A stretch of 64,000 nucleotides of DNA from Fonticula alba ATCC 38817 (GCA_000388065.2 KB932201.1), one strand, 5' to 3'. Shown: positions 1,481 to 64,000, counted from the stretch's first letter. Made by a program: numbers and translations. Notes: generated by a model not told the origin, from the sequence alone.

Positions 1481-2567
1481 ATGTCTGCCACGCCGATCGA
1501 GGGTGCGCCCTCCGTGGCCTTGTCCCTGCCATTGCCCCATGGCTTTCGCCCCGTGTTGTACCTCATGCTCCGGAGCACCTCGCTGACTGCCGAGCTGGCA
1601 TCGTCCTGTCTCTCCTCGCCCCCTCCCTCCTCCTTCTCCTCTTCCAGTGCTGGCGATCGCCTCTTTTGATGGAACTGATGACGATGAGCTTGGCTTCAGC
1701 CTCGGCGATACGCTGACCGTGATCGACAAGCCTTCCGATCACTGGTGGCTGGCCCGCCATCGCAATGAGGCCGGTTTCATCCCCTCCACCCATGTCCGGC
1801 CCATTTCCGGTACGCCCTGTCATCGCACCTGTTCTCCTGTATGATGGTACCGGAGGTCGTCCCCCCCCCCCCCCCCACTCACGCCGTCCCCTTTCCCCAC
1901 CTTCATCCAGAGGTCCAGTTTTGCCAGGCACTGGCTCCGCTGGACTCGGCCGGCGAGGGGACTCTGCACCTGGACAAGGGCGACGTGGCACTCTTCCTAA
2001 CCACGGTGCGCTCCATGCTCCCTCCCCCCTCCCCCTGTCCCGCCTCCCCGTCCCATACACATGCATGTGGACACACATATGCATGTCCACACATGTGTGC
2101 GCCTTTTCCTTGGCCTCCGCTGACTCGACTACCTCCCCCCCCCCCCCCCCCCCCCCATACCTTGAGGATGGTCTTCTCCTGATCCTCAAGAACGGCCTGA
2201 CGGGCTCTTTCCATGGCCATTCAATCAAACTCTTCCCCAGTGGGTATGTCCCGGGCTCTGGGCCACCACCTGGAGAGGAGGACGATGACGCCCCCGATGG
2301 TTATGGCGATGTGGCTCCCGAGCCAGAGGAGGATGTCGACAGTGGTGGCAGTGGTACTGCTGGTTTCGGCTCCCCCCCGGCTCCTCTTCCTCGGCCGACC
2401 CCGGCCTCGCGTTTCTCGCCGCCCCCATCGGCGACGGCTGGCTTCGCCGGGCCACCGCCGCCGGTGGCTCCCCGCCCGGTTCCTGCCGTATGTCCAACCC
2501 GGCATCCCTTCCCCCCCTTCCCGCCCCCTCCCTGGCTGACATCCTCCCTTCCGCTTCTCCCTCCCTC

Positions 2568-2599
<32 letters not shown>

Positions 2600-4338
2600 C
2601 CAGTCCCCCCCTCCCGAGGAGGATGCCATCGATACGTCTACTCCACCGAATCCGTTCACTTCCCTGCGGAGGGCTCCCTCGGTGGCTGCGCGCCCGAAGC
2701 CCCCTGCCGAATCACCTTCCGACGTGCGTGCACACATGGACAGCATGTGCCTCATTCCCGCTGGCCAATCCACGAATGCATCGCCCTCCTTTCCCCGACC
2801 TGAAACTCATCTTGTCTCTTCCCTCTCCCCCTGCCCCCCTCCCTCCCTCCCTCCCGGGCTTCCTCCTCCTCGCCTCCTGTCACCGGGTGCCCTCGCAGCC
2901 TGATGAGCAGCCTCAGATGCGCAACATGTCAGCCGCTTCCGTGCAAAATCGCATGACCGTCCGTTCGCAGTATTCGCCCTCTGGTGTGCTGGTTCCGGTG
3001 CTCGTTCCTCCCGGGGCCAATGCCGGGCCGGACAATGAGCTATTGGCCAAGCTCAACCGCCGGCGTTTCGATGATGATGATTCAGATGCCCCCTCTTCCG
3101 GGCCCCCCTCGTCTGCTGGGAGCCCGGGCCTGGCCTCAGCGTCTGGTGGCAGCAGCGGCAGTAGCAGCAGCAGCAGCAGCAGCGGCTTTTCCTCTCCACC
3201 AGCCGCCTTTTCTCGTCCACCGGCCGCGGCCCCTCCCTCGGCGACGGCATCGCAGCCGGCCCCTTCGGCGAGTACCAATGATGATGCCTCGAACGGCAAT
3301 TCCGGCGACTCCTCCGGCCGCGGGCGCTTCTTCGGCTTCAACAAGATGTCCTCGCTGACAGGTGGCCTGCCAAAGCCGGCCCCGAAGCCGGCCCCCAAGC
3401 CCAAGCCCTCCGATTCTGGCAACGCCCCCGAGTCGACGGCCAAGCCCGACTCTGACAAGCCCAGTGGGGGGATTGCCCTGCCGTTTGGCGCGCGGTCGCT
3501 ATTTGGTGGCCCCCCGCCGACGGGCACCAAGCCTCCTGCCGGGGGGCCGACCGGCGCAGGCGCTGGCGGTTTCTCCGGCCCACCGCCGCCCATCGGCCGC
3601 AAGCCCAGCACCGCGGCCACCGCGACCGCCCCCCCGTCCGATGGTCAGCCCTCCTCCCCTTCGACCGGTGGTCCTCAGAACCCCCGGCTGCGGCATCTGA
3701 CGGCGGACCGCGCGCGGAGTGCCCAGCGTCGGCCGCCGTCGGTGCGCGGGGCGGCCGCGGCCGCGGCCGCGGATGCCGCCAACAAGCCCACCCCCGGAGC
3801 CTTCGGTCCGTCGGATACTGCCCCCATTTCCGGATCGACCAGTGGGAAGCCCACTCCCGGGAGCAAGCCACGCGCGCCGGTCCCCGCTGCGGCTGCCTTT
3901 GGTGGCCCGCCGCCGTCGTCGACCACGACGACCGCCGCCGGCCCCACGACCGCATCTGCCGCTGGTGCTGCTGCCTCTTCTGGGGATTCTCCCTCGCGGG
4001 CGAGGAGCGCCAGCCGGCCTTCCCTCGGGTCGGCCACCTCGACCGAGAGCCTGTCTGCGGAGCAGCTGGAGTCGGTCGTCTCCCGGGAGATGGCCGCTCC
4101 TCTGGCGGCCATCGACAACCTTCGTCGCAAGCTCGAGGAGGAGAAGGCGCGCTCGGAAGCCCTGGCCAAGCAGGTTGAGGCCAGCAAGAAGAGCCACGAG
4201 ACGCTGATTACCATGCTGAACTCCATGGCGCAGGAGAAGCACGAGCTGGCCAAGAAGGTTGCCTCCATTGAGGCGAAGATGGCCTTCGTTGTGGAATACC
4301 TGAACGGCGTTGGGGCACACATCCCGCTGAACATGTGA
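1481..4338 (+). CDS. SH3-SH3, Pro-rich, CPI motif and C-terminal coiled-coil adaptor (CD2AP/CIN85-like)
   Basis: Exons 1481-1502, 1648-1809, 1911-2005, 2167-2487, 2604-2723, 2899-4338, all phase-compatible (intron 3 needs a GAG acceptor). SH3 #1 VLAIASFDGTDDDELGFSLGD...HWWLARHRNEAGFIPSTHV; degenerate SH3 #2 FCQALAPLDSAGEGTLHLDKGD/DGLLLILKNGLTGSF; LRHLTADRARSAQRRPP; terminal heptads IDNLRRKLEEEKARSEALAKQVE. Confidence 0.85.
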
Positions 4339-5273: not shown

Positions 5274-7790
5274 GTTGACGGTGGTTGTGGGTGGAAGAGG
5301 GGGGGGGGAAGGAGAGCGGTGTGAATCGGAAAAAAGGGGTGCTATTTGCTCCGCCCCCGGAGCCACCGGCTCCTGACGCCGCTTAAATATGGTCTCCCGC
5401 GCGCTCCGTCCCGGCAACTTTGCGTGAATCCCCGCCGCATCTCGCCCGCGATGGCAGCGCAAGCCGGGGAGCGTACCTTCACGGGCCGAGGCGTGTCACA
5501 CCGAGGCTTGGAAAGTCCATGGGCCGTTTGCGCCGGTCCCCAGTGTCCGGCCTTGTGTTCGCGCCTGCCACACATTGCCACGCCCGGAGGGCGTCAGAGC
5601 GGTGCCTCCTGCCCCTCCCCCCCCCNNNNNNNNNNNNNNNNNNNNNNNNNNNNNNNNNNNNNNNNNNNNNNNNNNNNNNNNNNNNNNNNNNNNNNNNNNN
5701 NNNNNNNNNNNNNNNNNNNNNNNNNNNNNNNNNNNNNNNNNNNNNNNNNNNNNNTGGCCCCCCCCCCCCCCCCCCCCCCCCCCCGGCCCCTGGACGAGGC
5801 CGCCGGAGGGACTCCCCGAAGCATCATGCCACTTGTCGGGGAAAAGGTGCGACCCCGGAGCTGGCCGCCTCTTGCGGCCGGTGTGCAGCCTCTCACGGTC
5901 CGTTGGCGGGGCGCGGGCGATCACCACCAGGATAGCTGGCGGAGGCCAGACCCGGAGCCTGGCGAGGCAGGAATGCGTCCGGCCCCGCTCGAGGGGCGGC
6001 GGTGGGCGATCGCCCTGGGTCCGTCGCCCGTTGCCGAGTATCCGCATCACCGAGAATCTCACAAGGGCGCTCGGGCACTTCTGGCTTCCCCCCCTCCCCC
6101 CATCTGGGAGGCCAAGCGGGTGAGGTGCTTTCCAGGCGGAAAACGCTTGAGGAGGGGTCTAAGAAAAGGAAAAGTTGCTCCCCCGGACCCCCCCCTCCCA
6201 TGGTGCCCCTCTTGTGTGTGGTACTACCCCTGGCCCCCTCCTGGCTGCCCCCGGCATGTAGGCAAGGAGCAGAGGGCGCACCGTGTGAATGGCCAAAAAG
6301 CCCAAAGGGAGGACACTTGGGCGACGCGCAGTGGATGCGTGGGCGCCAGTGAAGCTCCGTGTACGACCGCCGTGCACAGCCAGCCCCATCAAGGGCGCCA
6401 AGGAGACTCAACGGGGGCGGGGGGCGGGGAAGGAAAAATATCAGCCCAGAGGTGGTGGGGGAGAACGCGCGTGGAAAAAGGCGCGCACTTGTCCGGCCGG
6501 GGATTCCACGTTCACCCGCGGCACGAGGGTCGGCCCGACGATAAAAAAAATAAATGAGACGCTGGGAGGTCTCGCCCAACGGCATAACAGGCGCATACGT
6601 GGGCAGATGCTGTAAATATAACATGCTAAAGGTCATGTTGATCAAATGACTGGGCCGGCATACTCATCACACGACCGCGTGCCACGTGTAGCGCGCTTCT
6701 CACGGACTCGGTCTTTCATCAAAGGAGTGACACTTTGACCGAGGGCCGTGCCGGGAAACTGCTCTTGGCAAAGAGCACCCTAGGCATGAGGAGAGGGCGC
6801 GCCAAGCTGGGAGAAAAAATACAGTCGCCTAGAGGGCGAGGATCTTGCAACCGGATCCGACACGAGTCCGGGTGCGTGCGAAAGAAACGGGATGGTACAA
6901 AATAAAAGGGACTCGCGGGGAAGACGAAGAACAGGCGTTCGAGGGTGTTACCGGTGTTTCGGTGACTCTTTCCCATGGTCTCCGACACCCTGCTGCTGGG
7001 GTCTTCGCTCTCGGGAGATGTCCTGGAGGAAGTCTCCCCTTCGACCTTTGGATTCGGTTAGGCAGCAGATCTGAGACCTCCAAACTTGCCTGTGTCTCCC
7101 TCGTCATTGGCGCTCTGTACAGGCCTAAGGTCGGCGGCCGTTCGGGAGCCAGGTTACCCCACTTTTCTCCTCGGAGGAACACTGTTTAGAATGCCGCCAT
7201 GTGTCACGGGGCTCAACTGCGTGCCTTCTGGATTCAATCAAGTGATCCACCTCCCCGGGTCGCGTCGGATCCCACCCACTGGAAGCCGCGCCCCGCCACT
7301 CCACATTGTCATCTAACACACACACACGCGTTCACGCGCGTCGTGGCGAAAGAAATGGCCCGCACATACACGCGTGAACAAACACAGGCTCGCACCCAGC
7401 CCCTTCGCCGTCTCTTCTCGTTTCATGTCCCTTTCCAAAAAAAAAGGGGATGTATTTTTGTGCCGATTGGTGTGGGCCTCAAGGGGGGGGGGGGGGGGAA
7501 GGGCGAGGCACACTCACTAAGGGGCGGCGCCTCCCCACCCCGGGCCCGAAGCAAGTTCGCGAGATGGGTGCACACGCACCACTCCCGGCCCTCTTTTCTT
7601 GTCTGCCCGGCTCCCCTCTCTCGGTGCCCTTGTCGGTGTACCACTCCTGCACATGGATCTTCCCAACAAGATGGGCTTGCGGGAGAAGGGGGAGAGGGGG
7701 GGGGGAAGAAACTATGTGCAGCAAAGAAAAAGACCAGGGGAGCACATGATTCAGCAGCTGGGAGGAGATTCAGGCGGCGGGGGGGGGGGC

Positions 7791-9340
<1,550 letters not shown>

Positions 9341-17776: not shown

Positions 17777-18540
17777 NNNNNNNNNNNNNNNNNNNNNNNN
17801 NNNNNNNNNNNNNNNNNNNNNNNNNNNNNNNNNNNNNNNNNNNNNNNNNNNNNNNCCCCCGTCACAGGCGGGCCGTAAGAGTGGCATCTGCGCGCCGGTT
17901 ATGGGGGACGTGGCGGGGGCGAGGCCGGGGAGGGGGGGGGGGGCCAAGTTGGATGGGCCGGACGGCGGCCCCGGTAGTGGGGGCAACGGCGGCGCGGGAC
18001 GGAGCACCCCCGGCAGGGGGCGATCCGCGTCTTGACACGGAAGCGCCGGAGCCGGCCGCCAGGACACGCATGGGACGTCGGTCCGGGGCAGACCGGCGCT
18101 CAACCGCGATCGTAGCATCCCCTGGCCGCCCCCGGCCCGGCGCCCGGCCCGGCGGAAGGGACACCCCCGCTTGCCCCTCGCTCTTTCCCCGGAGAAGGGG
18201 GCAAGGCGGGCCCCGGGGCCCGAGGGGAGCGCCGCAGAGGACCGGTCGACTCGGGGGACTGCGCGACCCGAGAACAGGGGGCGCCGGAGCGAGGGGCGCC
18301 CGGGCCGCCATTATGCCGGACACTCCCTCGGGATGCCCTCGAGCACCGCCAGGGGGCGGGGGGGTGGGCGTTTCCCAGCGCCGAGTCTGGGGGGGGGGGG
18401 GGCGAGCTGTGGGCATCTCCATTACCCGGGCCTTCGTGGGCTTGGCCCTCCCCAAGTGGTGCTGTTTGCCTGAGGTCCCACCGCCAGGCCACGGGCCGGG
18501 GCAGATGGGAAAGAGCTACGCACACGCGCAAGCACCCACC

Positions 18541-26900: not shown

Positions 26901-27988
26901 GGTATTGAGCATCAGCAGGGCAAAGGCCAGGATGAAGGCCGTGTCTGTGGGGCGTAGCGACGACAGGGGGAAGGCGGGAGAGGGGAGGGAGGGGGAGGCG
27001 GAGCAGGTAGACGGTCAGCCAGCCAGCCAGCCAGCCGGGAAATGAGGGAGGGGAGGGGGTGGCGGGCTGAAGGTGCGACCAGGGGCCGCTGTGTGGAGGG
27101 CAGCAGGGGAGAGGGTGGCACTGGCGCACCGGAGAGCAAGAAAACCCCAGGGTTTTGCTGGCAATAGGCCTCGGAGAAGGACTCCAGGATTCGGGAGATT
27201 GCTTGGGCCTCGAGACCGGTCACCGTGAAGTTGGCCGATGTCAGGAACTTGCTGTGGTGCACATTGCGGAGCAGGAGCGCCGGGGGGCGGGGGNNNNNNN
27301 NNNNNNNNNNNNNNNNNNNNNNNNNNNNNNNNNNNNNNNNNGGATGGCAGTGGGGGACGGGCAGCCAGTGAGCTGGCATGGCCAGTTTGTGGGAGACAGC
27401 AAGCGTGTTGACGTGTGCATGTGTGTCCAAATGTTTAAAGATGGAAATACATATATATAATAGACGTGCGAGGGGGAGGAGGAGAACGCACCGAAAGGCT
27501 GCCTCCAAATTCAGGCCCTGCATGGGAAAGTGCATGCAGAAAGCCTCCCGGACCCGGTTGGAGTGGGTGTCCCGGCCGGCGATGTAGCCGCCAACACGGT
27601 GCCGGTCGAGAGCCGGCTCGCGAAGGAGAAAGCGCGCAATGGCCTCGATCATGGGCCCGGGGAGCTCCTCGAAGTCCAGCTCCCCGGGAGCAGCAGCCAG
27701 CAGGGAGGCCATCTTGTCGGCATCAGCAGCGGAGGCCAATGCGAAGAAGCCATGGCGAATGAGGAGCTCGATGCCCTTTGTCCATGTGCATGAGTCCGGT
27801 TAGAGCGGGTGCAGTGACCGGGTATGCGCGGGGCGAGAGCGGTGATGATGGAGGTGGCCGAGACAGCAGCGGGCTCTTCCCGGGCGTACCAGCTTCGGCG
27901 AGAGATGGAAGACATAGATGTCGGCGTAGAAGAGAGACCGGACCTGCTTGGCGTCCGAGGCCTGGATGGTCGTCGAAGTGACGGTCAT
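23935..27988 (-). CDS. Sec7-PH Arf guanine nucleotide exchange factor (BRAG/IQSEC-like PH), 1099 aa
   Basis: Exons 27988-27890, 27775-27492, 27251-27130, 26944-25263, 25047-23935 sum to 3300 nt. Sec7: FHLSPKL/GIELLIRHG, RVGGYIAG, FTVTGLEAQAISRILESF, DTAFILAFALLMLNTDAH, LRKMYTSIVSNEIRL. PH: ERRLIY...IYLFNDSILLQK. Intron 2 contains an N-gap. Confidence 0.88.
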
Positions 27989-28617: not shown

Positions 28618-30167
28618 NNNNNNNNNNNNNNNNNNNNNNNNNNNNNNNNNNNNNNNNNNNNNNNNNNNNNNNNNNNNNNNNNNNNNNNNNNNNNNNNNNN
28701 NNNNNNNNGGCTGGCCCGAGGGGGGAAGGGGGGGGGGGGGGGCCTATGTCCTGCCCTTGTCTCTGCCCTCCGGTGCGTGGCCCCTGTGCACCCCTTGGGG
28801 CCCCGGGGCCAGCGGAGCTCCCCCGGTGCGAGGGACGGGGTGCGATCTTGCCTGATTGGTGGACCTGCGCCCGGGGTCCCACGGGCTGGGGGCGCCCCCG
28901 TCCCCGTCCCCCGGAATGTCGACGGACCCGAGGGAGGTCCTTCATAGGATGTGTCATTGAAAAGGCCGGCCCACAAGAGGGGCCATGTTGCGCCGACGTT
29001 CGGCCCCTGCCGGCGCCCCACTCTCTGCTCCCCCCCCCCCCCCCCCGGGGTGGGGGCGGCGGCGGCCTAGCTGGGCTTACCCTATTCGACAAGATCGGAG
29101 CTGCGGCCAAACTCCGCGCGCCGCCCCGGGCGGCCCAGATGGCTAAAGGTCCGGCGGCAACCGTCAGGCGACGGCGCCAGGGGGGGGGGCGAGGCGCATG
29201 CCGTTGGAGCCGCATCTGGCGGGCTGGCGTGGCTCAGCGAGAGCCGGAGCATTTGAGCCGGGGGCCGGGGGATGTGCGGGTGCTCCTCCCAATGTTGTTT
29301 TTCCGGCGGTGACACCTACGCTGGCCACTTCGCCGGCAGCGCCCGGGGGACTTTTTTTTTTTCCCGAGCCGCGCTTTTTTCTCCCTCCAGCCGGGCCACA
29401 CAATCCGGCACTTCAAGTGCGGAGGGAGCGCACGCGCATTCCAGAGCCCGGCCGCTCCCCAACCACCCGATCTTGGTCGGGCTGGGCCTGGCCACACCGC
29501 CGGCCCCCCTCGGCCTGTCCCTCCGTTGAGCGTCGGAGGTCTCGGCAAAAGGCCCGACCGGCGTGTCTCTTGGGGGATCCTGCTCCCCCGCGTCCCGCGC
29601 CCGGCGCCCCGGTCCTCTGCCTCCCTGCGCTTGAAGATAGAGACGGCCGAGGTCCCCCCGCCCGCCCTTTGTATGCCCTCCTTCGGTGGACAAGTGCTCC
29701 CCCCTCCCCCAGAGACCCAGCAATTGGCACCGCGGGGCCCGCGGTGCCCCTGTGCGCGTCAATCGCCGTGAAATGCTCGATTCATGCAATCGTTGGCAGG
29801 TGGCATATCCGACGAATTCCTCCGCCCGCGCCCGCCCGTGCTCCCCCCATCCTGGAATCATGCCGGCTGACACGCCCGGCCGCCGCGCCGCAGGTTTTCT
29901 TCTTTCGGCATCACTCCAGCCAGCCGAGAAACGGCCCCCAGTAACCCCGGCCCGTGGTGCGTAAGTATGTGTCCCACACACGGCGGGACATTGGTGCTCG
30001 GGGCCTCGCAGGCTCACAGATGACCGAGAAAGCTGGTGTGGATGTGGATGCGCGGAGGGAGGAGGATACACACACACGAAGAGAGAGAAAGCGAGAGAGA
30101 GAGAGAGAGAGATGGAGAGAGAGGCTGCGGACACACATGGCTTGTATTCAACCGATGAGTCACCCCG

Positions 30168-36544: not shown

Positions 36545-38017
36545 CTAGATCTGCAGCTCGAGCTCCAGCTTGAGGTTGGTGCGGATCCAATCCGGCAGGC
36601 GGGCAAAGCGCCGGTGCACGCCAGTTGACGGCCAGTAATGCGGGGCCAACAGCAGCTGTCGGAGGGTGCGCTCCGGCAGGAGGAGCTCCAGCGCATCGGG
36701 CGATGTGACCGCCACCCCGGCTGGCCAGGGGCGCTTGACGATCAGGTCATACCGGAGTAGGCGATTCGAGTGGGCCACCGCATCCGGGCCCGGGGTGTAG
36801 GCGCCGGACCAGCCGGCGAAGTGCGCGGAAAAGGTGCTCGGCTCGGTGCCGGCCAGTACCACAGTCACGCCGGCACGCGGGTCGAGCCCCACATGCGACG
36901 CATATTCGGCCGCCACGCGCACAAGCAACTCAAAGGAGCAGGACCCGATCGTCAGACCGAGACTTTCGAGCACCGGAGACGACCCGGCGTCCGCGACCGA
37001 GGGCACCGGTGGCAGGAAGGCCGGGCACATCGGGCCAATCCAGAGGAAGACCCCGGGCCGAGGGGGGGCCCCCTCTCCCGGGGCCGGGTCGGTCGTGACA
37101 TCGCGCAGTGAGCGAACAGCCGGGTCGACAATGTACGCGCAGTCCGGCCGCAAGTCGCGCTGGTGGAACGTCCGCACGGGAAGCCGCTCGAGATTGATGT
37201 ACGGCGAGGCCAGGTTGGGGAAGGAGATTTCCAAGAGGACAGGCCAGAGGGGCTGGAGCACGGAGAGCCGGGCAGACGCGGGAGTCAGATGGGATTATCG
37301 AAAGAGGGAATGCCATCCAAGCGGAGGGGGGAGAAAGGGGGAAAGAGTGCGAGGACGAGCGAGAGAAGGGGGAGAAAAGGGACATCGGAGAGATGCATGC
37401 TGGACGGATGAATGCGCACCGTGGGCCGTGAGGGGATCGGCGGGGCCGGGATCGGGCGGCCAATCATGCCAACCGGCGTGTCGGTGTCCAGCCCCAGGTA
37501 GTGGCAAAAGTGCCGCCAAGCAGCGGCCATACGGGGAGTTGCAGCGACAGGCAGCTTCCCATCGGGCCCCGGCGGCTCGGAAATGGTCTCTGTCGCGGCC
37601 GAGGACCCCATGGCCTGGGCGATGTGCTGGGCATTGGCCACCTCGGCCGGGCTGGCCAGAGACCCAGCCCACACGACCGTGAAGGCAGTGCGATCGGGCC
37701 CGGCCCCAGCGCCAGGACCGCCCACCTCACCAGCAAGACTTCCCACGCGCGCCTGGAGGATGAAGCAGTCCCTGCTGTTTAGGGCGCTCCAGTGGCAATC
37801 CGCCTCGACGGCCAGATCGCGCATGCCAGCCAGGTAGGGCTTCAGCTGATAGAGCGTGACAGCTGTGACTGGGGTGTTGTCGGGGCCAGCCTCCGTCGAC
37901 ACCAAGGTCGACAGCCAGTGGAGGTGTTGCGTCAGGCTGGCCTGCCGCTGGGCGTGAGGGCCGGCAGACACCGTCACCAGGGGATCGACAGCATTGGCGG
38001 CCGTGGTGGTGGAGGTA

Positions 38018-38053
<36 letters not shown>

Positions 38054-39916
38054 GCAGTGGCGATCATTGGCTTGGAGCCGGGTGATGCTGTCTTGGGCGA
38101 GCCCGAAGTGCCGGCCTCCAGCGGCGGCACTCGGAACAGGCGACTGGGATTGTGCCTGAACGTCAGACGGGGATGGCTTGCCCCGCGACGGTACACCAGC
38201 GGCCGGCCAATGAATGTCGTAAACCAGTTCGGCTCCTCGAATTGAGAGATGATGAAGAGCTGTTTCGATTTGGCGGCGGCAGCAGCAGCAGCAGCAAGGG
38301 AAGTCACAGGGTCAGGAGGGGCGGGGGAGGGGCAGGGAAGCGCGCGGAGGCGGAGAGAGGGGGGAAGGAAAAAAACCCCGGACAAGAAACAAATCGGTGG
38401 TACGCACCCGAGGAAGGGCCCCAGCCAGCTGGAACTCATTGATCAGACCACGAGCAATCTTACGCTTGAACTGAGGCCCAGGCAAGATCGATGGCGAAAG
38501 GCCGTGCGAAAGGGGCGAGCAGAAAGAAAAGGGAAGAAGGACGAAGTCAGTGGTACAGGGGGGGGGGGGGGATCTGGTCAGCACAAGCCGAACGCCAACG
38601 CACGCGGGTCGTTTGTGAACCCTGCCACAGGATGAGGGTGCGCTCGGGTGAGAGGGCACTCTCGTCGATGTAGAAAAACAGGCAGTCCTCCGAGAAGAGG
38701 AGCAGCGGCGGTGGCGGAACCCCGGTGGTGAAGGGAACCCCCTCGAAAAGCGCGTCGCGGGTGACATCCAGCGACTTCTGCTCGACCTCGTCCACCAGGA
38801 AGACACGCCCCTGGGCCGATGCCAGGGAGATGCCGGCCGAGTGGGAGTCCGTTTGGATGGATCCAGCACCGGCGCGCCGGCCCGGGACCAACTGCATCCA
38901 GGGGGCCTCGCGCCCGGTGGGTGAGACGACAAAGTCGTCCGCCTGGCCGAAGGTGGCCAGGACCTTGACATGCTCGCGGATTTGTGGCAGAGCTAAGGAG
39001 CGCGGAGGGGAAGGGAGGAGGAGATGGCAGTAGCAGCAGCAGCAGCAGCATGAGGATCAGCAAATCGAGGAGCCATAAGGGGGGGGGGGGCAATGGGCCG
39101 GCATGGGGAAAAAGGCAGGGGCCCCCTTGGTGCGTACTGTCCAGGGAGAGGAGCGACGAGGAGTCAAACCAGTCATCGAACTTGCTTCGCCAGAAGACAC
39201 TCTCACGGCCGGAAACCTCGCTACGCACGGTGGCAAAGCAGGTGTTACTGGCCAGGCCATTGCTGGGAGTCCCGGCCGGGGCGTCGGCCGAGCGGTCATT
39301 GACTTCATGGTCGGAGTCAATGCTGCCGATGGAGGGCCGCCGGGAGTCAGGCTGCCGAGTGGGCGAGACGCCGGCGGCCGTCACAGCCGCGCCCCGGCTG
39401 CCACCGGCCCGCTTGAAGAGCCGCCGCTCAACAAAGGCCTCAGCCCGGTCGACCGCCAGCAGGGCGGCCGTCACCCGCAGGACAGTCGGCGTCCGCGGCC
39501 CGACCCAGGTGAACACCTCGCCGGCCTCGGTGTCCAAAACATAGGCGGCTCCAGGGTCCAGCGAGGGGCGCAGCCGTCCGGAGGCCGCCTGCGCCGACTC
39601 ATCGGCTGATATGGCCACCCGCTCGACCACGGTGCCGCTGGCGTGATCCGAGTCGCTGGGGTTGGCAGCCACCCGGAGCAGGGTGTATGCCCGGGTCCAG
39701 GCGCCCTCCTCCACGGCATCGAGGCCGGCATCATACTCGGACGTGACATCCGCCCGGCGGCCATGTAGGGTCTGCCAAAATTCCGCCGTGTCATCTGGGG
39801 CAAGGACCGAGAGTTAGGTGGAGTCAAGACAGGGGGGCGGATGGCAAGAAGAGAAGCCCCAGCACGGGGGGACCCATATTGGGGCGCAAAAATAATGACA
39901 ATCAAACCCGATAACA

Positions 39917-39949
<33 letters not shown>

Positions 39950-42900
39950 CATTCAACACCGGCCAGGCACAAAGGTACATGGCAGCCCCATTCCGGAGAC
40001 GCACCGGACACGGTGATGATGTTGGCCGAGAAGTAATCCTGCAGGGCAACATCGCGGGCAAAGAGACGAGCAGCATCGCGCTCCCGCCGGGAGGCCCGGC
40101 GCCCGGACCAAACGTAGATATTGGCATCAAAGGCTCGGTACTGCGACGACTGGCTCCCGGCCGGCGGGACAGATGTGGCCGCGGCTGGCTGGGACTCGAT
40201 GATCAGCACGAAGGCGTCGCCCTCATTGAGGCGCGACACCGACAACTCGGGGATCAGCCGCGCGCGCACCACCGAATGGCCCTTCAGCGTGTAGAGGAAT
40301 GTGCGCTGCAGGGCGCAAAGTAATGCCGGGCGAGAGCGAAAAGGCCAACACCAGGGAGGAGGCACAGCGACCGGGGGTCAGCACGCCCGAGGCAAGGGAG
40401 GACGGCGAAAGGCAGCGGAGAGGCACATGAACAGCACACCATGAGGGAGGCAAAGGGGGCAAGGGGGAAAGGAAACGCACCGGCGCCGACACAGGCGGGA
40501 TGTAATCCTGGATGCGCTCGCGCAAGGACCGGAGGAAGTCCGAAGCCGCGTCGGCCCGCTGCTCGTGGGCTGACGCGGCGGCCGGCTCGGCCTCGGGGTC
40601 GGCGGCGTCCAGGCGAGCACGCTGCTCCCGGTGCGACAGGACCGACATGGCCCAGTTGGGCAATTCCCGCGCCGCGCCGGGGCCAGCACCGGCGGAACTC
40701 GGACTGACCGGCGACAGGGGGGGCGGCGTGTGCAATGCTGAGGCCATCGTATCGGGCCCGAGGAGGAGGCTGGCCCGAGCACCGGCAAGCAGGCGAATGG
40801 TGTGGCGACGATCACGAATGAGATCTTGATTCCGCAGACGGCTCACGTTCGGCGCCCCGGACGACGCCAGGGCACCCTCGAAGCTGACCGACGCGTCGAT
40901 GGCTTCCGCACTGCGGGGCGCTGCACTCTGGAGAATGGAATACCTGATGCTCTGCCGCGTGGCCACCGAGGTGGAGGTCGAAGTGGCCCTTGCCCGAGCG
41001 GCCGCCCCTGGCTGGGGGAGAACCAAATGCAAGGCATCCGACTCATCGCGCAGACGCCGCAGCAGCGCCACAACATCCGCCTGCAGGGATACCCCTGGGA
41101 CCACGACAAGCACCGAGGCCGGCAGGGGAGCCGCCGGTGACACCGGCGACACCGGCGACAGCGGACTGCCCGTGGAGGAAGTAGCCGCCGAGGCCGGGCC
41201 AATGTCAATGCGCACCACATGCACGATGTCCGGCCCCGGGCCTGCCGAGTCTTCGGAGGAGGTGGGCCGCAATGTGCGCACAGTCAAAGGGGTCACCTCG
41301 CGGAGACGTGTCACCGGGATGGATAGCAAGGGAGCGGTGGACCATTCGCCCGAACCGCGAAGCTGCACATGCTCCAATGACAAGTCCGTGCACAGAACCG
41401 CCGCCGTCTGGCGGGCCAGCAGCGGGGTGATATCCTCCTCGTCGCTGACCATGGCCAAAGGGGCGGCCAGCGAGTCGTCGCACAGGCGAACCGAAACCCC
41501 GGCCAGGAGCAGGCGTCGGACGCACGCCCGATCCAGCGAGCGACACGCCAGGTGGCGCTGCTGCACCAGCGAGCTACCCTGGGCGCTGTTTCGCAGAAGC
41601 TGAGATCAAAGCAGTGGGACAGCCCCCCATGCGTTAGGACAGGAAGAGACGCGAAGAACCGGGCAGGGGCACATGTCGTCGCTGACAAGGGCCGGGAAAA
41701 AAAAAAGGGGGACAGGCTTCGTACCAGCGAGTGGATGGTCTTCCAAGTGGTGGTGATCTGGCCGCCAACGCCGCCGGCGCCACGGGTAGCAGCCCGATAA
41801 GCGAGGATATCCTGCACCGGCAGGGGGAAGCGCCGCAAAGTGTGATTGGTCTCCAGTGCTGTCAGGAGCTTCTCGAACCCGAGCATGGTCGATCCATTGT
41901 TGTCGAGGGAGACGGATTGCAGGGTGGAGTTGTGCTTGAGAACTCTGCAGGGGGAAGATCATGGGTCGACAAAGGGACGGAGGTCAGGGTGCGAGAGGAA
42001 AAAGAAGAGGAGGCGGACAGATGGCAGAAGGTATGGGAATCAAGAGGAGAGAGAGAGAGATAGGGAGAGAGAGATAGGGAGAGAGAGATAGGGAGAGAGA
42101 GATAGGGAGAGAGAGATAGGGAGAGAGAGAAAGAAAGAGAGAAAGAGAGAAAGAGAGAAAGAGAGAAAGAGAGAAAGAGAGAAAGAGAGAAAGAGAGAAA
42201 GAGAGAAAGAGAGAAAGAGAAAAAGAGAGAAAGAGAGAAATAGAGAGAGAAGACGTACTCAACAAGGGCCACGAGAGCGGCATCCTCGCCAGCATGTCCA
42301 CTCAGATCTACCGCCCGCAGGCTCTGATTGAACCGCAGGGCGGGCAAGATGGCTTCGACGAGATCCTGACGCAGGCAACATGCCCCGGCCCGGCCAGATG
42401 ACTGGCCATAATCCCCGCGCATGGACAGCCGTTCGATGCATGGGCCTTGGGTGACGTCGGCGCTGGGGGCGGTGGCTGCGCCATCGCTCCGATCGCTGGC
42501 CACGCAACTCCGCAGCATCTGTGCAAAGAGTTGTGCCGGGCGGGAAACCGGCGCCGGGGGGCCGGCACCCGATCGAGACCCGCCAGTGCCCGGGCCAAAG
42601 CGCATGCGCCCATGCTCGCCGGGGCTGTGCGCCGCGCCAAAGCACCGGTCCATCACCAGCGATCGGAGGGATGACGACCCGGCCAGCAAGGAGGAGGCAA
42701 CCGCCTCGAGGCCGGCATTCCCAAGGAAGTTGTCACTAATGTCCAGGGCCACGATATTGTGCGAGATCAGGCCGAAAATCAACTCCGCGGTTTCGGCATT
42801 CAGGCCAACGTCGCGCAACACCAGGCACACATCCGCCAGGCAGGGATTGACCAAGAGATACCGGATGAACACCGGCAGGGAGTCCAGGGACAGAGGGTTG

Positions 42901-43773
42901 TGGCTCATGTCGAGGTACTGCGCGACACACCGCGGGGATCCCACCAAGATGAAGCGGGGGGCGAGGGGGGGGGGGGNNNNNNNNNNNNNNNNNNNNNNNN
43001 NNNNNNNNNNNNNNNNNNNNNGGGCAGACGCACCTTCAAATTTTCGCAATGCTGGATAATGTCCGACAGGGGCTTTAGGCAGGAGGTTTCATTCTCGGAA
43101 ATGTCCAGATACTTGAGACTCCGAGCGCAGCCCTTGGAGAAGTCCTCTGTCCAGAGGGGGTGCGAGCCGGGGCGCGAGATCCCAGGAAGGAGGGAGGGAA
43201 GGGAAGGTCAGGGGAGGGGGGGGGGGATAAGCGAAGGCCCGCCAAGCCTGATGGACGAGCCGAAGCAGAAGCACCACAGAAGGATGGGAGGGGAGAGGGA
43301 AGAAGAAAAGAGCCCATCCAAGAAAAAAAAGCCAGCTCACGCACCGACGACATATTCCAGCTTCAGGCGGGTGCGAGCAATGTCCAGGCGCTCGAGGTTG
43401 ACCGCGGCACGGAGGACCGGCGACAGGGCCGACAGCACGTAGCGGTCCAGGCGAATGGACCGAAGCTCCAGTCGGGTCAGATTGGCCGGCTGCAGGAGCA
43501 GCAACGATCGACACAGGGCGGCCATTCCCCGACCGCGGGGATTGGTCACCGACTCGGAGATGGCCAGCCCCCGGAGGCTGATGCCGCATGTGAGCAGGTA
43601 GTCCGCCAGGGAGGTGAGCGCTCGGTCGCAGAGGAGGTTGCCGCTGAGATCCAGCGAGTGGAGCTCGCTGGCCGTGGGACCATCTGCCGGGGAGACCCGC
43701 GCAGATGTGGAGCTTGGCGAGAAGAAAGTCATCGAGGAGGAGGGAGACATCCCGACGGCCGCGGCGACACCGC

Positions 43774-43804
<31 letters not shown>

Positions 43805-46024
43805 GCCAGAGGCGATTGCCACCGAGGAGCCGGCCCCATCGACCGCCGGGTGCAAGAGACGCGCCCGGCCAGCCAACAGTTCCACCGGATCGACGGTCAG
43901 TCCCACGCGCGACGCCTCGATGTAGGCGAAGGGGGTCCGATCTCCAAGAGCCATGAGCTGTGCCAGGGCGTCCAGCGCCAGGGGCGACAAGGGCAGGTAG
44001 GCGGCGTGCGCTTTCTCACGGGCCGTCGCCCCATTGAGGCCGCTGCCACTGCTGCTGCCCAGAGCACGGTGCCGCCGGGTGCGCAAAGGCAACGCCGGCA
44101 GCGGAGCCCCGGGCGAGGAGGTGGCCTCCTCGGCGGCGAGTGCGGTCGGATTCTGGTGGTCCGGCGAGGCGACCCCCTCCGACCCGTCCGAGGAAAGAAT
44201 CCCCGGACTGAAGGAGGACGCCATGGCCAGGGTCCGGCTGGCACCGAGGGCCAAAGCAACGATCGACGCCCCGAGCCCCTCGAAGCTGGTGCTGTCGCTG
44301 GTGGTGGCGGACGAGCTGACAGCCGGGCCGCCGGCCGCGCCAGCCGCGGCCAGGAAATCCAACCGGGTATTGAGCGGATCAAATTGCGACCGGGGAACCT
44401 GGCCCCCCTGGGCGTGGATCGCCGCGAGATGCAACTCCGGCGAGGGGTCCGGCCCGAAGGTCAAGCTGCTCCAGCGTCGCGAGTAGGCCAGCGACCAGAG
44501 CAGCGCCGCCATGTGGTCGTGCACCGTGTCCAAATCCAAATCCGGCCGCCAAAAGCGCCCCATGCGGAAGGTGCCCCGCAGGAGGGGATGCCCATGGGCG
44601 GAGGAAAGCTTCCCCGGCACCTCGGACCCATCCAGGTAGCTGGCGGAGTCGGCCTGGGCCGCGTGGTGCGCGAGCTCGGCTGCAGCCAGGGCCGCTTCCT
44701 CGGCCGCCAGGGTTCCCAAAACCAAAAGGTGCGACTGCAGCGGCGTCAGGGCCTTGGGAAAGCGGAAGCACGACGCCCGGTAGGAAAGGGCGAAATCCGC
44801 CGGATCGCCATGGGGAAGATGCGCCTTGAGAACGGCGAGGCTGTTTGCGAAAGGGAGGCAAAAGCAAAGCAGGTAAGAAGACCGGCGGCGGAAGGACGTC
44901 GGGCGATTGGGGGGGGGGGAGGGGGGGGAGGGTGGAGAGGAAGGGCAGAGCGAAGCGCATGACGAACCGATCGGGTGGCGTCACCTCCAGCGAGAAGGGA
45001 AGTCTCGGGGAGGAGGGGTACACGGCGTAGAAGCGCTCCAGCAACACTCGGATGAAGGGGTCACACATGCCCGGGGAAAACCGGATGAAGACATGCAGGG
45101 TAGTCTGGGAAGCGGGAACGCTGCCACCCCCGGCAGGCAGTTCGACGCCATTGATGCTGGTGCCGGGAGGGGCATCCGGTCCGGCAGGAGGAGCATCGGC
45201 AGCGCCGGATCCGGCCGCCGGATCCGGGTCCTCGTCACCCTGACGGCGTGAGAGGGTCTCGGCGGCAATGGACGAGTCGAAGGGGGACTGGCATTCGAGG
45301 ATCAGCTCGTTGGGGGACGCCTCGGAATTGACAATCGCCACGTCAAGGAGGTGAATCTGGTGGAAGATCTACGCCGAACATGCATGTGTGAGCAAATGGA
45401 AGGGGCTCGAGGTTTGTCGTTGTTTGTTTGTTTGTTTGTTTTTTGCCTGGTGTGTGCGTGTGCGTGGCGCGCTCCGGTGGGAGAGCCCTGACAAGCTGGA
45501 GAGAGGGCACGGGCGCTCGTGCGGGGGCGTACTTTCGTGGAGTCGGCGAAAAAGATGTTGAAGTCATCAATCAACACCAGGCCCGAGGACACCGCGGCGA
45601 AGGTGCCGGGGATGGTGCTGCTGCACTGCCCGGCCATCGGGGCACGCCCCCCTTGCAGAGCCTGGGCCACCATGGAAAAGGACCCGGGCGAGCCGATCAA
45701 ACGCTGACACTTGAACTCCACCGATGGGTCGGAGAAGTATTCGACGGTGCCGCGCTTTTCGAGCTCCTGCTTCAGGAGGTCTGCGAGGCGTGAGGCGTTA
45801 GCTTGAGACATGGCGCACGGGGGGGGGGGGGCAAGAAGAAAGGAGGGGCGCGCGAACAGGCCAGAGTGAGCGAGGCGCGCGAGGAAAGGTGGAGAGCGAG
45901 ACGCACCCTCAGCCGAAGCGGAGGGGGCCCCGGTGGCAGCGCGTGCGGGTTGATTCCAAATGGCCAGCTTCGTGACCAGACGGTCAACCCGAGACGAGGA
46001 GACGGAAGGCGAGGCGGCGGCCAT
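36545..46024 (-). CDS. CARMIL-type PH+LRR fused to five gelsolin repeats and a villin headpiece, 2432 aa, 14 exons
   Basis: Exons 46024-45907, 45801-45533, 45368-45022, 44840-43345, 43146-43034, 42917-42259, 41944-41725, 41599-40481, 40305-40005, 39794-39138, 38992-38604, 38470-38408, 38259-37420, 37252-36545 = 7299 nt; all GT-AG with matching phases. RI-type LRRs end in LDNNGSTMLGFEKLLTALETNHTLRRFPLPVQD...LLRN. Gelsolin motifs include LNEGDAFVL..IYVWSG and LNSRDCFIL..VVWAG. Headpiece FARLPDWIRTNLK. Confidence 0.85.
42046..42250. repeat. Purine-rich minisatellite/microsatellite in intron 6 of the CARMIL-villin gene
   Basis: About five copies of a 14-nt GAGAGATAGGGAGA unit followed by tandem GAGAAAGA units. 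Confidence 0.85.
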
Positions 46025-57620: not shown

Positions 57621-58405
57621 TGTGCCATCTGCCCATGTCTCCACCTCCGCTGGAGGCCCTGAGTCCCCCTCCCCGTCTCCATGTCGAGCACGCCGCCTCC
57701 CTCCGAGCTGACACGCGTACACACATGCACGCATATGTGAGCATGCCGAGGAGGCTGCTGGACATGCCTGTGTGTGAATGTGCGAATGCGTGTGTGTGCG
57801 CGCACATGCGCGTGCGTGTTTGTTCGTCTGCGCACATGCGTGTGCGCACACACGCACACATATACATATGCACGCCGCCGCGCCCATGGCCGCCTCGACG
57901 CCTGGGAAAAACCGCTCCCATCACGGTTCTGGCTTGTCTAACTGTGCCCTACAAATAAAGAAGAACCCCCATGGAGAGTAGCCAGCCTGGTGTCAAAGCG
58001 TTGGCGCCTCAGCGCGTGACCGCTCCGATCGGGCGCCTTCATATGNNNNNNNNNNNNNNNNNNNNNNNNNNNNNNNNNNNNNNNNNNNNNNNNNNNNNNN
58101 NNNNNNNNNNNNNNNNNNNNNNNNNNNGGGGGGGGGGTGAGGACGAGCTGTGGGACTGGTCAACCATGTCCGCCAATGGCCCGAATATGTCCGAGCCATG
58201 GGCCGCCAGTCGGATCGCGAGTGTTCTTTCACAAGGCCCCGAGGCAGGGACAGGGGGGGAGGGGGGCTAGAATCGGGGGCGACCCCCGTGCGGGGATGGG
58301 ATCTCCCGTGGCTCCATGACTCGTTCAAAGGCGGATCAAGGCCGCGCGGATGTGGGCCAGTCCTGATGGAGGACTAACTGCTCAGCCCGTTCCCTCTCTG
58401 GTTCC

Positions 58406-63475: not shown

Positions 63476-64000
63476 GGTGTGTTGCCTGCGCGTGTCTGTG
63501 CATGGTCATGGAGGGGGGAGGGGGAGGTGGCCCCGAGGGGGAGAAGGAGAGGGCGGGAGAAGGAGGCGCGAGGATGGGGAAATGTCAGTGCCAGGCCAAG
63601 CGAGGAGGAGCGGCGAGGACAAATCCCCGAGCAAGCGAGGACGGGGGAGAGACAATCCCAAGGGAATGCACGAGGCAGACGCACTGTCAAGCGGAGGGGA
63701 GGACAGGGGGGGAAGAGCTGAGATAAAGCTNNNNNNNNNNGGGGAGGACAGGGGGGGAAGAGCTGAGATAAAGCTCTTTGGGGGGGTGGGCGGGGGGGGG
63801 CACACGGGGGGTGGAGTTCTCTCCAAGCGTCCGGGAGTGGGCTGGCGGACTTCTAGGTAAAGTGCAGCTGGGGAGGGGAGCCGGGCGTCACGGTGAAGAT
63901 GAGAGCAGGCCCCAGCCGGGGCACTGGCGAAGGGGGACATCCCTGAAATAGGTGCGCGCTCATGGTCGCATGCAGTAGGGCAGCGAAGGAGGGAGGCACG

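What the first reader, a model, noticed from the sequence alone, without database searches (positions are those of the whole stretch)
36545..46024. CARMIL-villin chimera: PH+LRR head joined to gelsolin repeats G2-G6 and a headpiece
Seen: 14 GT-AG exons splice in phase into one 2432-aa ORF. The key joint IPPVSAP/RTFLYTLKG (40481/40305) is a clean phase-0 intron with no stop or new start in between. The N-half has a CARMIL-like PH (LVLIDDFNIFF../IFHQIHLLDV), RI-type LRRs and the CARMIL-like cap NHTLRRFPLPVQD...LLRN. The C-half has five gelsolin-like repeats and a villin headpiece. Known: CARMILs normally end in a CPI tail, Flightless-I uses a different LRR type with no headpiece, and Dictyostelium villidin has five gelsolin repeats plus headpiece behind a coronin/PH head. 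I do not know of this combination. Inference: a membrane-targeted, possibly dimeric scaffold that binds actin filaments directly rather than through capping protein.
Basis: partly seen in the sequence, partly recalled or inferred. Interest (0 to 1): 0.88.

Follow-up and report, generated by a model that had tools for sequence, protein, structure and literature searches.

The report
Fonticula CARMIL-head, villin-tail fusion gene
This is a real, transcribed single gene of the slime-mould-like amoeba Fonticula alba that joins the front half of the actin regulator CARMIL to a villin-like actin-binding tail, but it is already annotated and already mentioned in a 2024 paper.

Summary
Fourteen GT-AG exons on the minus strand (46024..36545) give one ORF. 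It is identical to the public protein H696_00867 of Fonticula alba, which is 2443 aa rather than 2432.

RNA contigs from two samples contain the key joint 40481|40305. One contig runs from the LRR exon through the cap, linker and G2 exons to the G3 exon, and its further letters reach toward G4. The assembly gap at 42977-43021 lies inside intron 5, and RNA bridges it with exactly exon 5 in between.

- **N half:** a CARMIL homologue. It matches CARMIL1 (PDB 4K17) at E 7e-20 against 7e-7 for ribonuclease inhibitor, and it carries the CARMIL-specific cap motif.
- **C half:** collinear with villin/gelsolin G2-G6. There is no G1, and the tail ends in a degenerate headpiece-like motif.
- **Not found:** the capping-protein-interaction (CPI/CSI) motif, CARMIL_C, and the dimerisation domain. 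The PH domain could not be verified.

The combination is not new. Hummel et al. [quoted passage not shown]

The same stretch was also noted once more by this scan (s1-065847). Interest is low to moderate.

The parts
36545..46024 (-). Whole CDS of Fonticula alba H696_00867 (2443 aa, 14 exons). Exons: 46024-45907, 45780-45533, 45368-44968, 44840-43345, 43146-43034, 42917-42259, 41944-41725, 41599-40481, 40305-40005, 39794-39138, 38992-38604, 38470-38408, 38259-37420, 37252-36545 (stop included).
   Evidence: This exon set translates exactly to P0001. P0001 was found with the exon 8 translation at 100% identity and is named. Introns 3 to 9 were seen as joints in RNA contigs, and intron 10 as a loose end that maps to exon 11. 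Introns 1, 2 and 11 to 13 rest on the annotation and splice consensus only.
44968..45620 (-). Candidate PH-like region (about aa 95-255; LVLIDDFNIFF.. / IFHQIHLLDV.. / ..FIRVLLERFYAVYP) with a roughly 45-aa low-complexity insert.
   Evidence: The resemblance to the CARMIL PH is visual only. Pfam, hhalign and HMM tests gave no hit. The single-sequence AF2 model has pLDDT 37.
42639..43675 (-). RI-type LRR block (aa 645-885; parts of exons 4, 5 and 6), collinear with CARMIL1 residues 275-515.
   Evidence: phmmer against PDB 4k17_A gives 7.2e-20 overall. A CARMIL N-terminal HMM matches aa 645-885 at 6.8e-8.
42918..43033 (-). Intron 5, which contains the assembly gap 42977-43021.
   Evidence: The sequence shows the donor GTGCGT at 43033 and the acceptor cgcAG at 42918. 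The RNA joint 42917|43034, with exactly the 113-nt exon 5 between exons 6 and 4, is.
41779..42350 (-). Last LRRs and the CARMIL-specific C-terminal cap (aa 982-1067; NHTLRRFPLPVQD), followed at the start of exon 8 by LLRN.
   Evidence: The cap exon hits 4k17_A residues 600-644 best, at E 2.6e-5. The CARMIL HMM matches aa 982-1067 at 6.5e-17.
40481..41599 (-). Exon 8: a 373-aa lineage-specific linker (aa 1086-1458) that stands where CARMIL has its HD, CPI/CSI and proline-rich tail. It holds an ANK-like stretch and a possible PH-like segment.
   Evidence: It has no homologue among 1.84 billion representatives other than itself, apart from ankyrin-repeat proteins that match aa 15-68 of the exon. 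It has no CPI/CSI and no HD. The nearest named Atlas clusters are all PH-like, but with scores under 0.9, so this is a lead only. AF2 was uninformative.
40306..40480 (-). Intron 8, the head-to-tail joint (175 nt, phase 0).
   Evidence: The sequence is. The RNA joint 40305|40481 is present in all four runs, within contigs of 2 to 3.3 kb, and the depth there fits no intronic coverage.
39138..40305 (-). Gelsolin-like repeats equivalent to G2 (exon 9 and the start of exon 10) and G3 (exon 10). G2 keeps the KGxxVVRA motif.
   Evidence: Pfam Gelsolin scores 46.4 bits (cut-off 21) for aa 1476-1559. As separate pieces, G2 scores 4.3e-7 and G3 0.011. The stretch aligns with villin 9jus residues 132-226.
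37474..38992 (-). Gelsolin-like repeats equivalent to G4 (exons 11, 12 and the start of 13) and G5 (exon 13), with a poly-Ala/Thr insert between them.
   Evidence: Gelsolin chains match query 458-559 at about 5e-5, and villin residues 441-504 align to query 454-515. For G5, all 8 PDB hits are gelsolin at the G5 position, the best at 0.013.
36797..37252 (-). Gelsolin-like repeat equivalent to G6.
   Evidence: All four PDB hits are villin, gelsolin or adseverin at the end of G6. Their E-values of 0.9 to 2 are not significant alone, but they are collinear.
36545..36694 (-). Degenerate villin-headpiece-like C-terminus (..RFARLPDWIRTNLKLELELQI, then stop).
   Evidence: Pfam VHP gives E 0.019 and 15.4 bits, below the cut-off of 27, and covers only profile positions 18-35. 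PDB phmmer finds no headpiece. The position at the very C-terminus after G6 is as in villins.

Best explanation
**What is shown**
A single Fonticula alba gene (H696_00867) is transcribed and spliced into one mRNA that encodes a 2443-aa chimera with three parts.
1. The head is homologous to the N-terminal module of CARMIL. It has an RI-type LRR horseshoe with lineage-specific inserts and the CARMIL-specific cap.
2. A 373-aa orphan linker stands where CARMIL has its dimerisation domain and its capping-protein-binding CPI/CSI tail. No CPI motif is recognisable.
3. The tail is villin-like, with five gelsolin repeats equivalent to G2-G6 (G1 absent) and a degenerate headpiece-like end.

**What is inferred**
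The protein has lost, or never had, CARMIL's defining activity of binding capping protein through a CPI motif. [quoted passage not shown] The coupling would run through the G2-type F-actin site (KGxxVVRA is kept) and perhaps through the headpiece.

Without G1 it should not sever or cap barbed ends as gelsolin and villin do. It would then act as a cortex/membrane-to-F-actin linker or scaffold, in the manner of supervillin and villidin, which use the same kind of G1-poor gelsolin-plus-headpiece tail.
For: - **One gene.** The exon set translates exactly to the public protein.
- **One transcript.** RNA contigs from two samples carry the joint 40305|40481 and the neighbouring joints with no intronic depth, and a single contig spans the LRR exon to the G3 exon.
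- **CARMIL head.** 4k17_A scores 7.2e-20 against 7.1e-7 for RI. The cap exon hits CARMIL1 residues 600-644. About 80 of 90 hits are CARMIL1/3. The HMM gives 6.8e-8 and 6.5e-17.
- **No CPI/CSI.** There is no RPK or RPR anywhere in the protein and no relaxed regex hit. An HMM built from 75 CARMIL CPI/CSI regions finds nothing at E<=1000. No CARMIL_C is found.
- **Tail.** Pfam Gelsolin scores 46.4 bits. The tail is collinear with villin 9jus from residue 132, the start of G2, to residue 720. G5 and G6 pieces hit only gelsolin-family chains. VHP scores E 0.019. The nearest Atlas clusters all carry Gelsolin, the top ones with VHP as well.
- **Meaning of G1 loss.** Eckert et al. 2011 (PMC3203266) link G1 of villin to capping, nucleation and G-actin binding. 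Pestonjamasp et al. 1997 (PMC2140202) describe segment 2 and the headpiece as F-actin sites.
Against: - No biochemical data exist.
- Only one gelsolin repeat passes Pfam's threshold. G4 and G6 rest on weak collinear matches.
- The headpiece is below threshold. It has lost residues that, by my memory of villin (K65, K71, F76), matter for F-actin binding.
- The PH domain, and with it membrane targeting, is unverified.
- Contigs cannot exclude minor isoforms, an internal start or intron retention.
- Depth is somewhat higher over the 3' half (about 10-13) than over the 5' exons (about 4-9).
- A very divergent CPI-like peptide could escape motif and profile searches that were trained on animal CARMILs.
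Confidence: 0.72

Rival explanations
1. The protein is a functional CARMIL, a capping-protein regulator, that simply gained a gelsolin tail. A cryptic, diverged CPI-like peptide in the linker would still bind capping protein. Hummel et al. 2024 list the protein as a CARMIL, which this reading would fit.
For: Hummel et al. list it as the F. alba CARMIL. The head is clearly CARMIL-like. CPI motifs are short and evolve fast.
Against: The strict and relaxed CPI patterns give no match, and there is no RPK or RPR anywhere. A CPI+CSI profile from 75 CARMILs gives no hit at E<=1000. No CARMIL_C is found. A good CPI-like motif sits instead in another gene of the same window.
Confidence: 0.12
2. The fused mRNA is a minor or read-through form. 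On this view the working products are two separate proteins: a CARMIL-like head, ended by intron 8 retention at the stop at 40226, and a G1-less villin-like tail made from an internal start.
For: If intron 8 is retained, the frame runs to a stop at 40226. Contig depth is somewhat higher on the 3' half. Assembled contigs drop rare variants.
Against: All four runs show the spliced joint, and no contig lies over intron 8. The exon 9 reading frame has no ATG at its start and begins in mid-domain at G2. The loose ends near 40273, 40610 and 40694 lack splice dinucleotides, sit in GC-rich words and map nowhere in the window, so they look like assembly chimeras.
Confidence: 0.08
3. The tail is a decayed relic. 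The gelsolin repeats and headpiece would be too degenerate to bind actin, and the protein would work only through its LRR head and disordered regions.
For: Four of the five repeats fall below Pfam's threshold, as does VHP. Long low-complexity inserts are present. The Atlas 'recognition' values are low.
Against: The roughly 1000-aa tail keeps an open frame across six exons and is expressed. Conserved cores survive, such as KGxxVVRA in G2, (E)PxxF...W at the ends of repeats, and LPxW..NLK in the headpiece. The whole proteome of this GC-rich organism is rich in Ala/Gly/Pro inserts, so weak scores are expected.
Confidence: 0.08

Closest known systems
CARMIL1/LRRC16A (PDB 4K17, 9EC0) and CARMIL3
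   Same: The RI-type LRR horseshoe is collinear over CARMIL1 residues 275-515 and 600-647. The CARMIL-specific cap N(H/Y)TLxxxPxPxxD...LLRN is present. CARMILs are the best and dominant hits.
   Different: There is no CPI/CSI motif, no CARMIL_C and no detectable helical dimerisation domain. The PH domain is unverified. Large inserts interrupt the sequence. About 1000 aa of gelsolin repeats are added at the C-terminus. No other CARMIL hit carries PF00626.
Villidin / class-4 coronins (Dictyostelium villidin; Eckert et al. 2011, PMC3203266)
   Same: The tail consists of four to five gelsolin repeats that have lost G1, plus a C-terminal headpiece, and it sits behind a non-villin head. Villidin has PH domains just before the gelsolin repeats, and the F. 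alba linker has a weak PH-like lead in the same place.
   Different: The head is a CARMIL LRR module, not a coronin beta-propeller. No WD or coronin domain is found. Homology of the linker to the villidin PH domains was not tested, because no villidin sequence was available to the tools.
Supervillin (p205)
   Same: It is a large membrane-associated F-actin side-binder whose C-terminal part is villin/gelsolin-like and ends in a headpiece. Segment 2 and the headpiece are its conserved actin-binding sites (PMC2140202).
   Different: The supervillin head is largely disordered and binds myosin II and other partners. It is not an LRR module. It is known from animals.
Flightless-I
   Same: It is the classic LRR-plus-gelsolin fusion.
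   Different: By my memory of the family, Flightless-I has short SDS22-type LRRs, six gelsolin repeats including G1, and no headpiece. Here the LRRs are RI-type and CARMIL-like, there are five repeats, and a headpiece-like end is present. The two look like independent fusions.
Fungal Bsp1, group I (Hummel et al. 2024, PMC10881157)
   Same: It is a holomycotan protein that combines a capping-protein-regulator lineage with C-terminal gelsolin domains. [quoted passage not shown]
   Different: Bsp1 has a CPI motif, at most three gelsolin domains, no LRR head and no headpiece. The F. alba protein has no recognisable CPI.

Membership tests
CARMIL | An RI-type LRR domain most similar to CARMIL LRRs and collinear with them | tested here: met
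   4k17_A scores 7.2e-20 against 7.1e-7 for RI. About 80 of 90 database hits are CARMIL1/3. The HMM matches aa 645-885 and 982-1067.
CARMIL | The CARMIL-specific C-terminal LRR cap (NYTLRFMPIPMYD ... LLRN in CARMIL1) | tested here: met
   The cap exon aligns to 4k17 residues 600-644 at E 2.6e-5. The columns N, T, L, P, P, D and LLRN are conserved in the alignment.
CARMIL | An N-terminal non-canonical PH domain (Pfam Carm_PH, PF17888) | tested here: inconclusive
   There is no Pfam hit. hhalign finds only the N-cap stretch at E 0.42. The PH HMM gives no hit. The AF2 model has pLDDT 37. A visual strand-pattern similarity remains. [quoted passage not shown]
CARMIL | A helical dimerisation (HD) domain after the cap | tested here: inconclusive
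   An HMM from 52 animal CARMILs gives no hit at E<=100. The HD is poorly conserved, so absence cannot be proven by sequence.
CARMIL | A capping-protein-interaction motif LxHxTxxRPK(x6)P plus a CSI motif | tested here: not met
   The strict and relaxed regexes give no match, and there is no RP[KR] in the whole protein. A CPI+CSI HMM from 75 CARMILs gives no hit at E<=1000, and shuffled controls score at most 5 bits.
CARMIL | The CARMIL_C domain (PF16000) | tested here: not met
   It is absent from my scan and from the precomputed list, which holds only PF00626 and PF27087. It is present in the CARMIL hits.
Villin/gelsolin superfamily | Gelsolin-type repeats (PF00626) | tested here: met
   The score is 46.4 bits against a cut-off of 21. 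The further repeats are weak but collinear.
Villin (canonical) | Six repeats G1-G6, including the capping and severing repeat G1 | tested here: not met
   The homology starts at villin residue 132, the start of G2, directly after the joint. The linker has no gelsolin hit.
Villin (canonical) | A C-terminal villin headpiece (PF02209) | tested here: inconclusive
   The score is 15.4 bits against a cut-off of 27, with E 0.019, over only the second half of the profile. PDB phmmer finds no headpiece. The LPxW..NLK.E..L motif is present at the very C-terminus.
Villidin / class-4 coronin | An N-terminal coronin (WD) domain | tested here: not met
   No coronin or WD Pfam hit appears in P0001.
Villidin / class-4 coronin | PH domains followed by a G1-less gelsolin array and VHP | tested here: inconclusive
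   The G1-less array is met. The PH-like nature of the linker is only an Atlas lead with scores under 0.9, and the AF2 model was unusable.
Flightless-I | SDS22-type short LRRs plus six gelsolin repeats and no headpiece | tested here: not met
   The LRRs are RI-type, with RI, NLRP and CARMIL as best hits. There are five repeats and a headpiece-like end.
Bsp1 (fungal CPI protein) | A CPI motif followed by at most three gelsolin domains | tested here: not met
   There is no CPI and there are five repeats. No Bsp1 sequence was available for direct comparison.

The most novel reading that the evidence does not exclude
The tail (a PH-like linker, then G2-G6, then a headpiece) is a villidin / class-4-coronin tail whose coronin propeller was exchanged for a CARMIL LRR head. 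On this reading, Fonticula records a domain swap between two ancient actin-regulator families. This fusion, with a CPI later lost in Fonticula, would also be a relative of the ancestor of the fungal Bsp1 proteins.
Probability: 0.2. Interest if true: 0.5.

Novelty: already known. Interest (0 to 1): 0.3.

Why it matters
Fungi lost CARMIL, and Fonticula sits at the base of the fungal side of the tree. Its only reported CARMIL-like gene has swapped the capping-protein-binding tail for a direct actin-binding tail. This is a natural experiment in how regulators of actin capping are rewired, and it bears on the origin of the fungal CPI protein Bsp1 (Hummel et al. 2024).

It also shows that the CPI motif is absent, which weakens the simple 'Bsp1 descends from the F. 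alba CARMIL tail' idea unless Fonticula lost the CPI secondarily. The architecture itself is not a discovery.

Tried and rejected
- **Pfam on single exon ORFs** gave almost nothing. The full protein was needed.
- **Word-indexed homologue searches** with the whole N half and the whole C half returned only the protein itself. Low-complexity words probably swamped the candidates. Only the LRR+cap region worked.
- **The linker search** against 1.84 billion representatives found no relatives. Two ankyrin-repeat proteins matched one ANK-like stretch.
- **Atlas on G6 plus the headpiece** gave bacterial and phage Rep clusters at low recognition, which I discarded. Two earlier Atlas calls failed on a format slip.
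- **AF2 without an alignment**, on the linker and on the PH candidate, gave pLDDT 33 and 37, which is unusable. No fold search was therefore run.
I did not pursue it.
- **MAFFT** placed the CARMIL PH against the wrong F. alba segment. That part of the alignment was ignored.
- **Profiles built from animal CARMILs** for the PH, HD and CPI found nothing.
- **The loose ends of RNA contigs** at 40273, 40610, 40694, 43835 and 44350 were considered as alternative exons. I rejected this because they lack splice dinucleotides, sit in GC-rich words and are absent from the window.
- **A second CARMIL or a villin in the genome** could not be searched for. The scan's notes list none.

Full report
**Observation**

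The window is GC-rich eukaryotic DNA, about 65% GC. I read the minus strand between 46100 and 36500 in three frames and joined the open stretches through GT..AG introns. Most donors read GTGCGT or GTACG. This gave 14 exons in phase.

Exon 8 ends at 40481 (..IPPVSAP) before GTGCGT, and exon 9 begins at 40305 (RTFLYTLKG) after ccctgcAG. The intron is 175 nt and phase 0.

My first model had 2415 aa. It differed from the public protein at the acceptor of intron 1 and at intron 3. The corrected exon list reproduces that protein residue for residue, 2443 aa.

**Identity**

A search of 1.84 billion representative proteins with the translation of exon 8 found one 2443-aa protein at 100% identity. The match lay at its residues 1086-1458. 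The word-indexed database names it 'hypothetical protein H696_00867 [Fonticula alba]', and UniRef calls it 'Gelsolin-like domain-containing protein'. The public annotation therefore already carries the fused model.

**Transcript evidence**

Four RNA runs of 2012 from two samples hold 86% of the sampled words of 40005-41599. I laid their contigs on 39100-45090. They show these joints, each with CT..AC ends on the plus strand, which is GT..AG on the gene's strand:
- 39794|40005
- 40305|40481
- 41599|41725
- 41944|42259
- 42917|43034
- 43146|43345
- 44840|44968

Depth in the bins that cover introns equals what the exon edges alone would give, so the contigs are spliced RNA and not DNA.

One contig of 3255 nt (X1 record 1) lies on exon 10, exon 9, exon 8 and exon 6. 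The 220 letters between its exon 8 and exon 6 pieces equal the length of exon 7. Its remaining 683 letters extend beyond 39138, and the first 30 of them map to the start of exon 11. It therefore links the LRR region to at least the third gelsolin-like repeat (G3), with further letters reaching toward G4.

This splice junction can only arise from a pre-mRNA that contains both halves. Contigs cannot exclude rare isoforms. Depth is somewhat higher over the 3' half, about 10-13, than over the 5' exons, about 4-9.

**Assembly gap**

The Ns at 42977-43021 start 12 bases after the donor ENLK|GTGCGT and lie in intron 5. An RNA contig carries exon 6, then exactly 113 letters, then exon 4. Those 113 letters equal the length of exon 5. 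No exon is hidden in the gap, and the frame is continuous.

**N half**

- As single exon pieces, the LRR exons hit ribonuclease inhibitor, NLRPs and CARMIL.
- The cap exon hits mouse CARMIL1 (4k17) residues 600-644 best, at E 2.6e-5.
- Residues 1-1100 taken together hit 4k17_A at 7.2e-20 and human CARMIL1 (9ec0) at 6.6e-19. The best ribonuclease inhibitor scores 7.1e-7.
- With the LRR+cap region as query, about 80 of 90 hits are animal CARMIL1 or CARMIL3. None of them carries a gelsolin domain.
- A profile of 72 CARMIL N-termini matches aa 645-885 at 6.8e-8 and aa 982-1067 at 6.5e-17.
- The alignment shows the cap N-x-T-L-x-x-x-P-x-P-x-x-D and LLRN conserved.

The head is a CARMIL homologue. 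The other CARMIL hallmarks are not there or cannot be shown:
- There is no Carm_PH and no CARMIL_C in Pfam.
- hhalign finds only the N-cap stretch (MAALLWSLAYSRRW against LAVIVASMAYNTWF) at E 0.42.
- Profiles of the animal PH and HD regions find nothing.
- A single-sequence AF2 model of the PH candidate is unusable, at pLDDT 37.
- There is no CPI motif. No strict or relaxed pattern matches, there is no RPK or RPR anywhere in the protein, and a CPI+CSI profile from 75 CARMILs gives no hit at E<=1000.

**Linker**

Exon 8 (aa 1086-1458) has no relatives in the 1.84-billion library. The only other hits were two ankyrin-repeat proteins that match one ANK-like stretch. Its nearest named Atlas clusters are all PH-like families: Myosin_TH1, PH_PLEKHM2, hSac2, Carm_PH and PH_BEACH. 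Their scores are below 0.9, so this is a lead only. The AF2 model was unusable, at pLDDT 33.

**C half**

- Pfam Gelsolin passes threshold for aa 1476-1559, at 46.4 bits.
- As separate pieces, G2 scores 4.3e-7, G3 0.011, G5 0.31 and VHP 0.019. The VHP score of 15.4 bits is below the cut-off of 27.
- Against the PDB, the tail hits villin (9jus) at 3.2e-5 and gelsolins at about 5e-5.
- The alignment pieces are collinear. Query 21-54 aligns with villin 132-165, the start of G2. Query 82-140 aligns with 170-226, query 454-515 with 441-504 (G4), and query 881-918 with 681-720, the end of G6.
- The G5 piece hits only gelsolins at the G5 position, the best at 0.013.
- The G6 piece hits only villin, gelsolin and adseverin at the end of G6, with E 0.9-2.
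- The whole linker plus tail is nearest to Gelsolin+VHP clusters in the Atlas, at weak scores of 0.72.

The homology starts at G2 directly after the joint, so G1 is absent.

The last residues, RFARLPDWIRTNLKLELELQI, share the LPxW..NLK.E..L pattern of villin headpieces as I remember them. They lack several residues that I recall as important for F-actin binding. PDB phmmer finds no headpiece. The headpiece is therefore probable but degenerate.

**What is known**

The paper's text does not mention the headpiece, the missing G1, the transcript evidence or whether a CPI motif is present. Its Figure 5A was not readable here.

Eckert et al. 2011 (PMC3203266) describe class-4 coronins (villidin). 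[quoted passage not shown] The F. alba tail resembles that module. I could not test this because no villidin sequence was available to the tools.

**Mechanism (inferred)**

With no CPI motif and no G1, the protein is unlikely either to regulate capping protein as CARMILs do or to sever and cap as gelsolin and villin do. What remains is a CARMIL head, whose partners are unknown and whose PH is unverified, tied to an F-actin side-binding tail. That tail keeps the G2 motif KGxxVVRA and perhaps a working headpiece. The protein would then be a linker or scaffold in the manner of supervillin (PMC2140202) and villidin.

**Verdict**

The novelty claim fails. The increments over the literature are the checked gene model, the RNA support, the G2-G6-plus-headpiece reading, the absence of a CPI/CSI motif and the link to villidin.

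Noticed in passing
window about 3688, + strand (inside 1481-4338): A good CPI-like motif, LRHLTADRARSAQRRPP, is the only match to a relaxed CPI pattern in all six frames of the window. It lies in the gene that another first-stage note (s1-066873) reads as a CD2AP/CIN85-like adaptor. Hummel et al. 2024 say that CIN85/CD2AP were detected only in holozoans, so a Fonticula member would extend that range.
   Followed up: partly
window about 41555-41395, minus strand (aa 1100-1153 of the protein): One ankyrin-repeat-like stretch (..LDRACVRRLLLAGVSVRLCDDSLAAPLAMV..) sits at the start of the linker. It drew two long ankyrin-repeat proteins as the only non-self hits (E 5.6e-14, summed over 22 repeats). 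Pfam does not call an ANK repeat there.
   Followed up: partly
window 40857: All RNA contigs of all four runs read T where the assembly has C on the plus strand. This changes codon 1333 from GGG (Gly) to GAG (Glu). It could be an assembly error, a strain difference or editing, and it needs a DNA run of the same strain.
   Followed up: partly
window 42042-42251 (intron 6): A CT-rich microsatellite-like array, (ctctctttct)n followed by (ctccctatctctct)n, fills most of intron 6. The read-laying tool skipped it as a repeat.
   Followed up: no
window 40273, 40610, 40694, 43835, 44350: Low-depth RNA contigs leave the gene at GC-rich words and continue with sequence that is not in the window. They have no splice dinucleotides, so they are probably k-mer assembly chimeras with other GC-rich transcripts.
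   Followed up: partly
window 720-789, 5626-5754, 8954-8963, 17777-17855, 27294-27341, 28618-28708, 58046-58127, 63731-63740: There are eight further assembly gaps in this 64-kb window. Gene models of the neighbouring genes may be affected.
   Followed up: no
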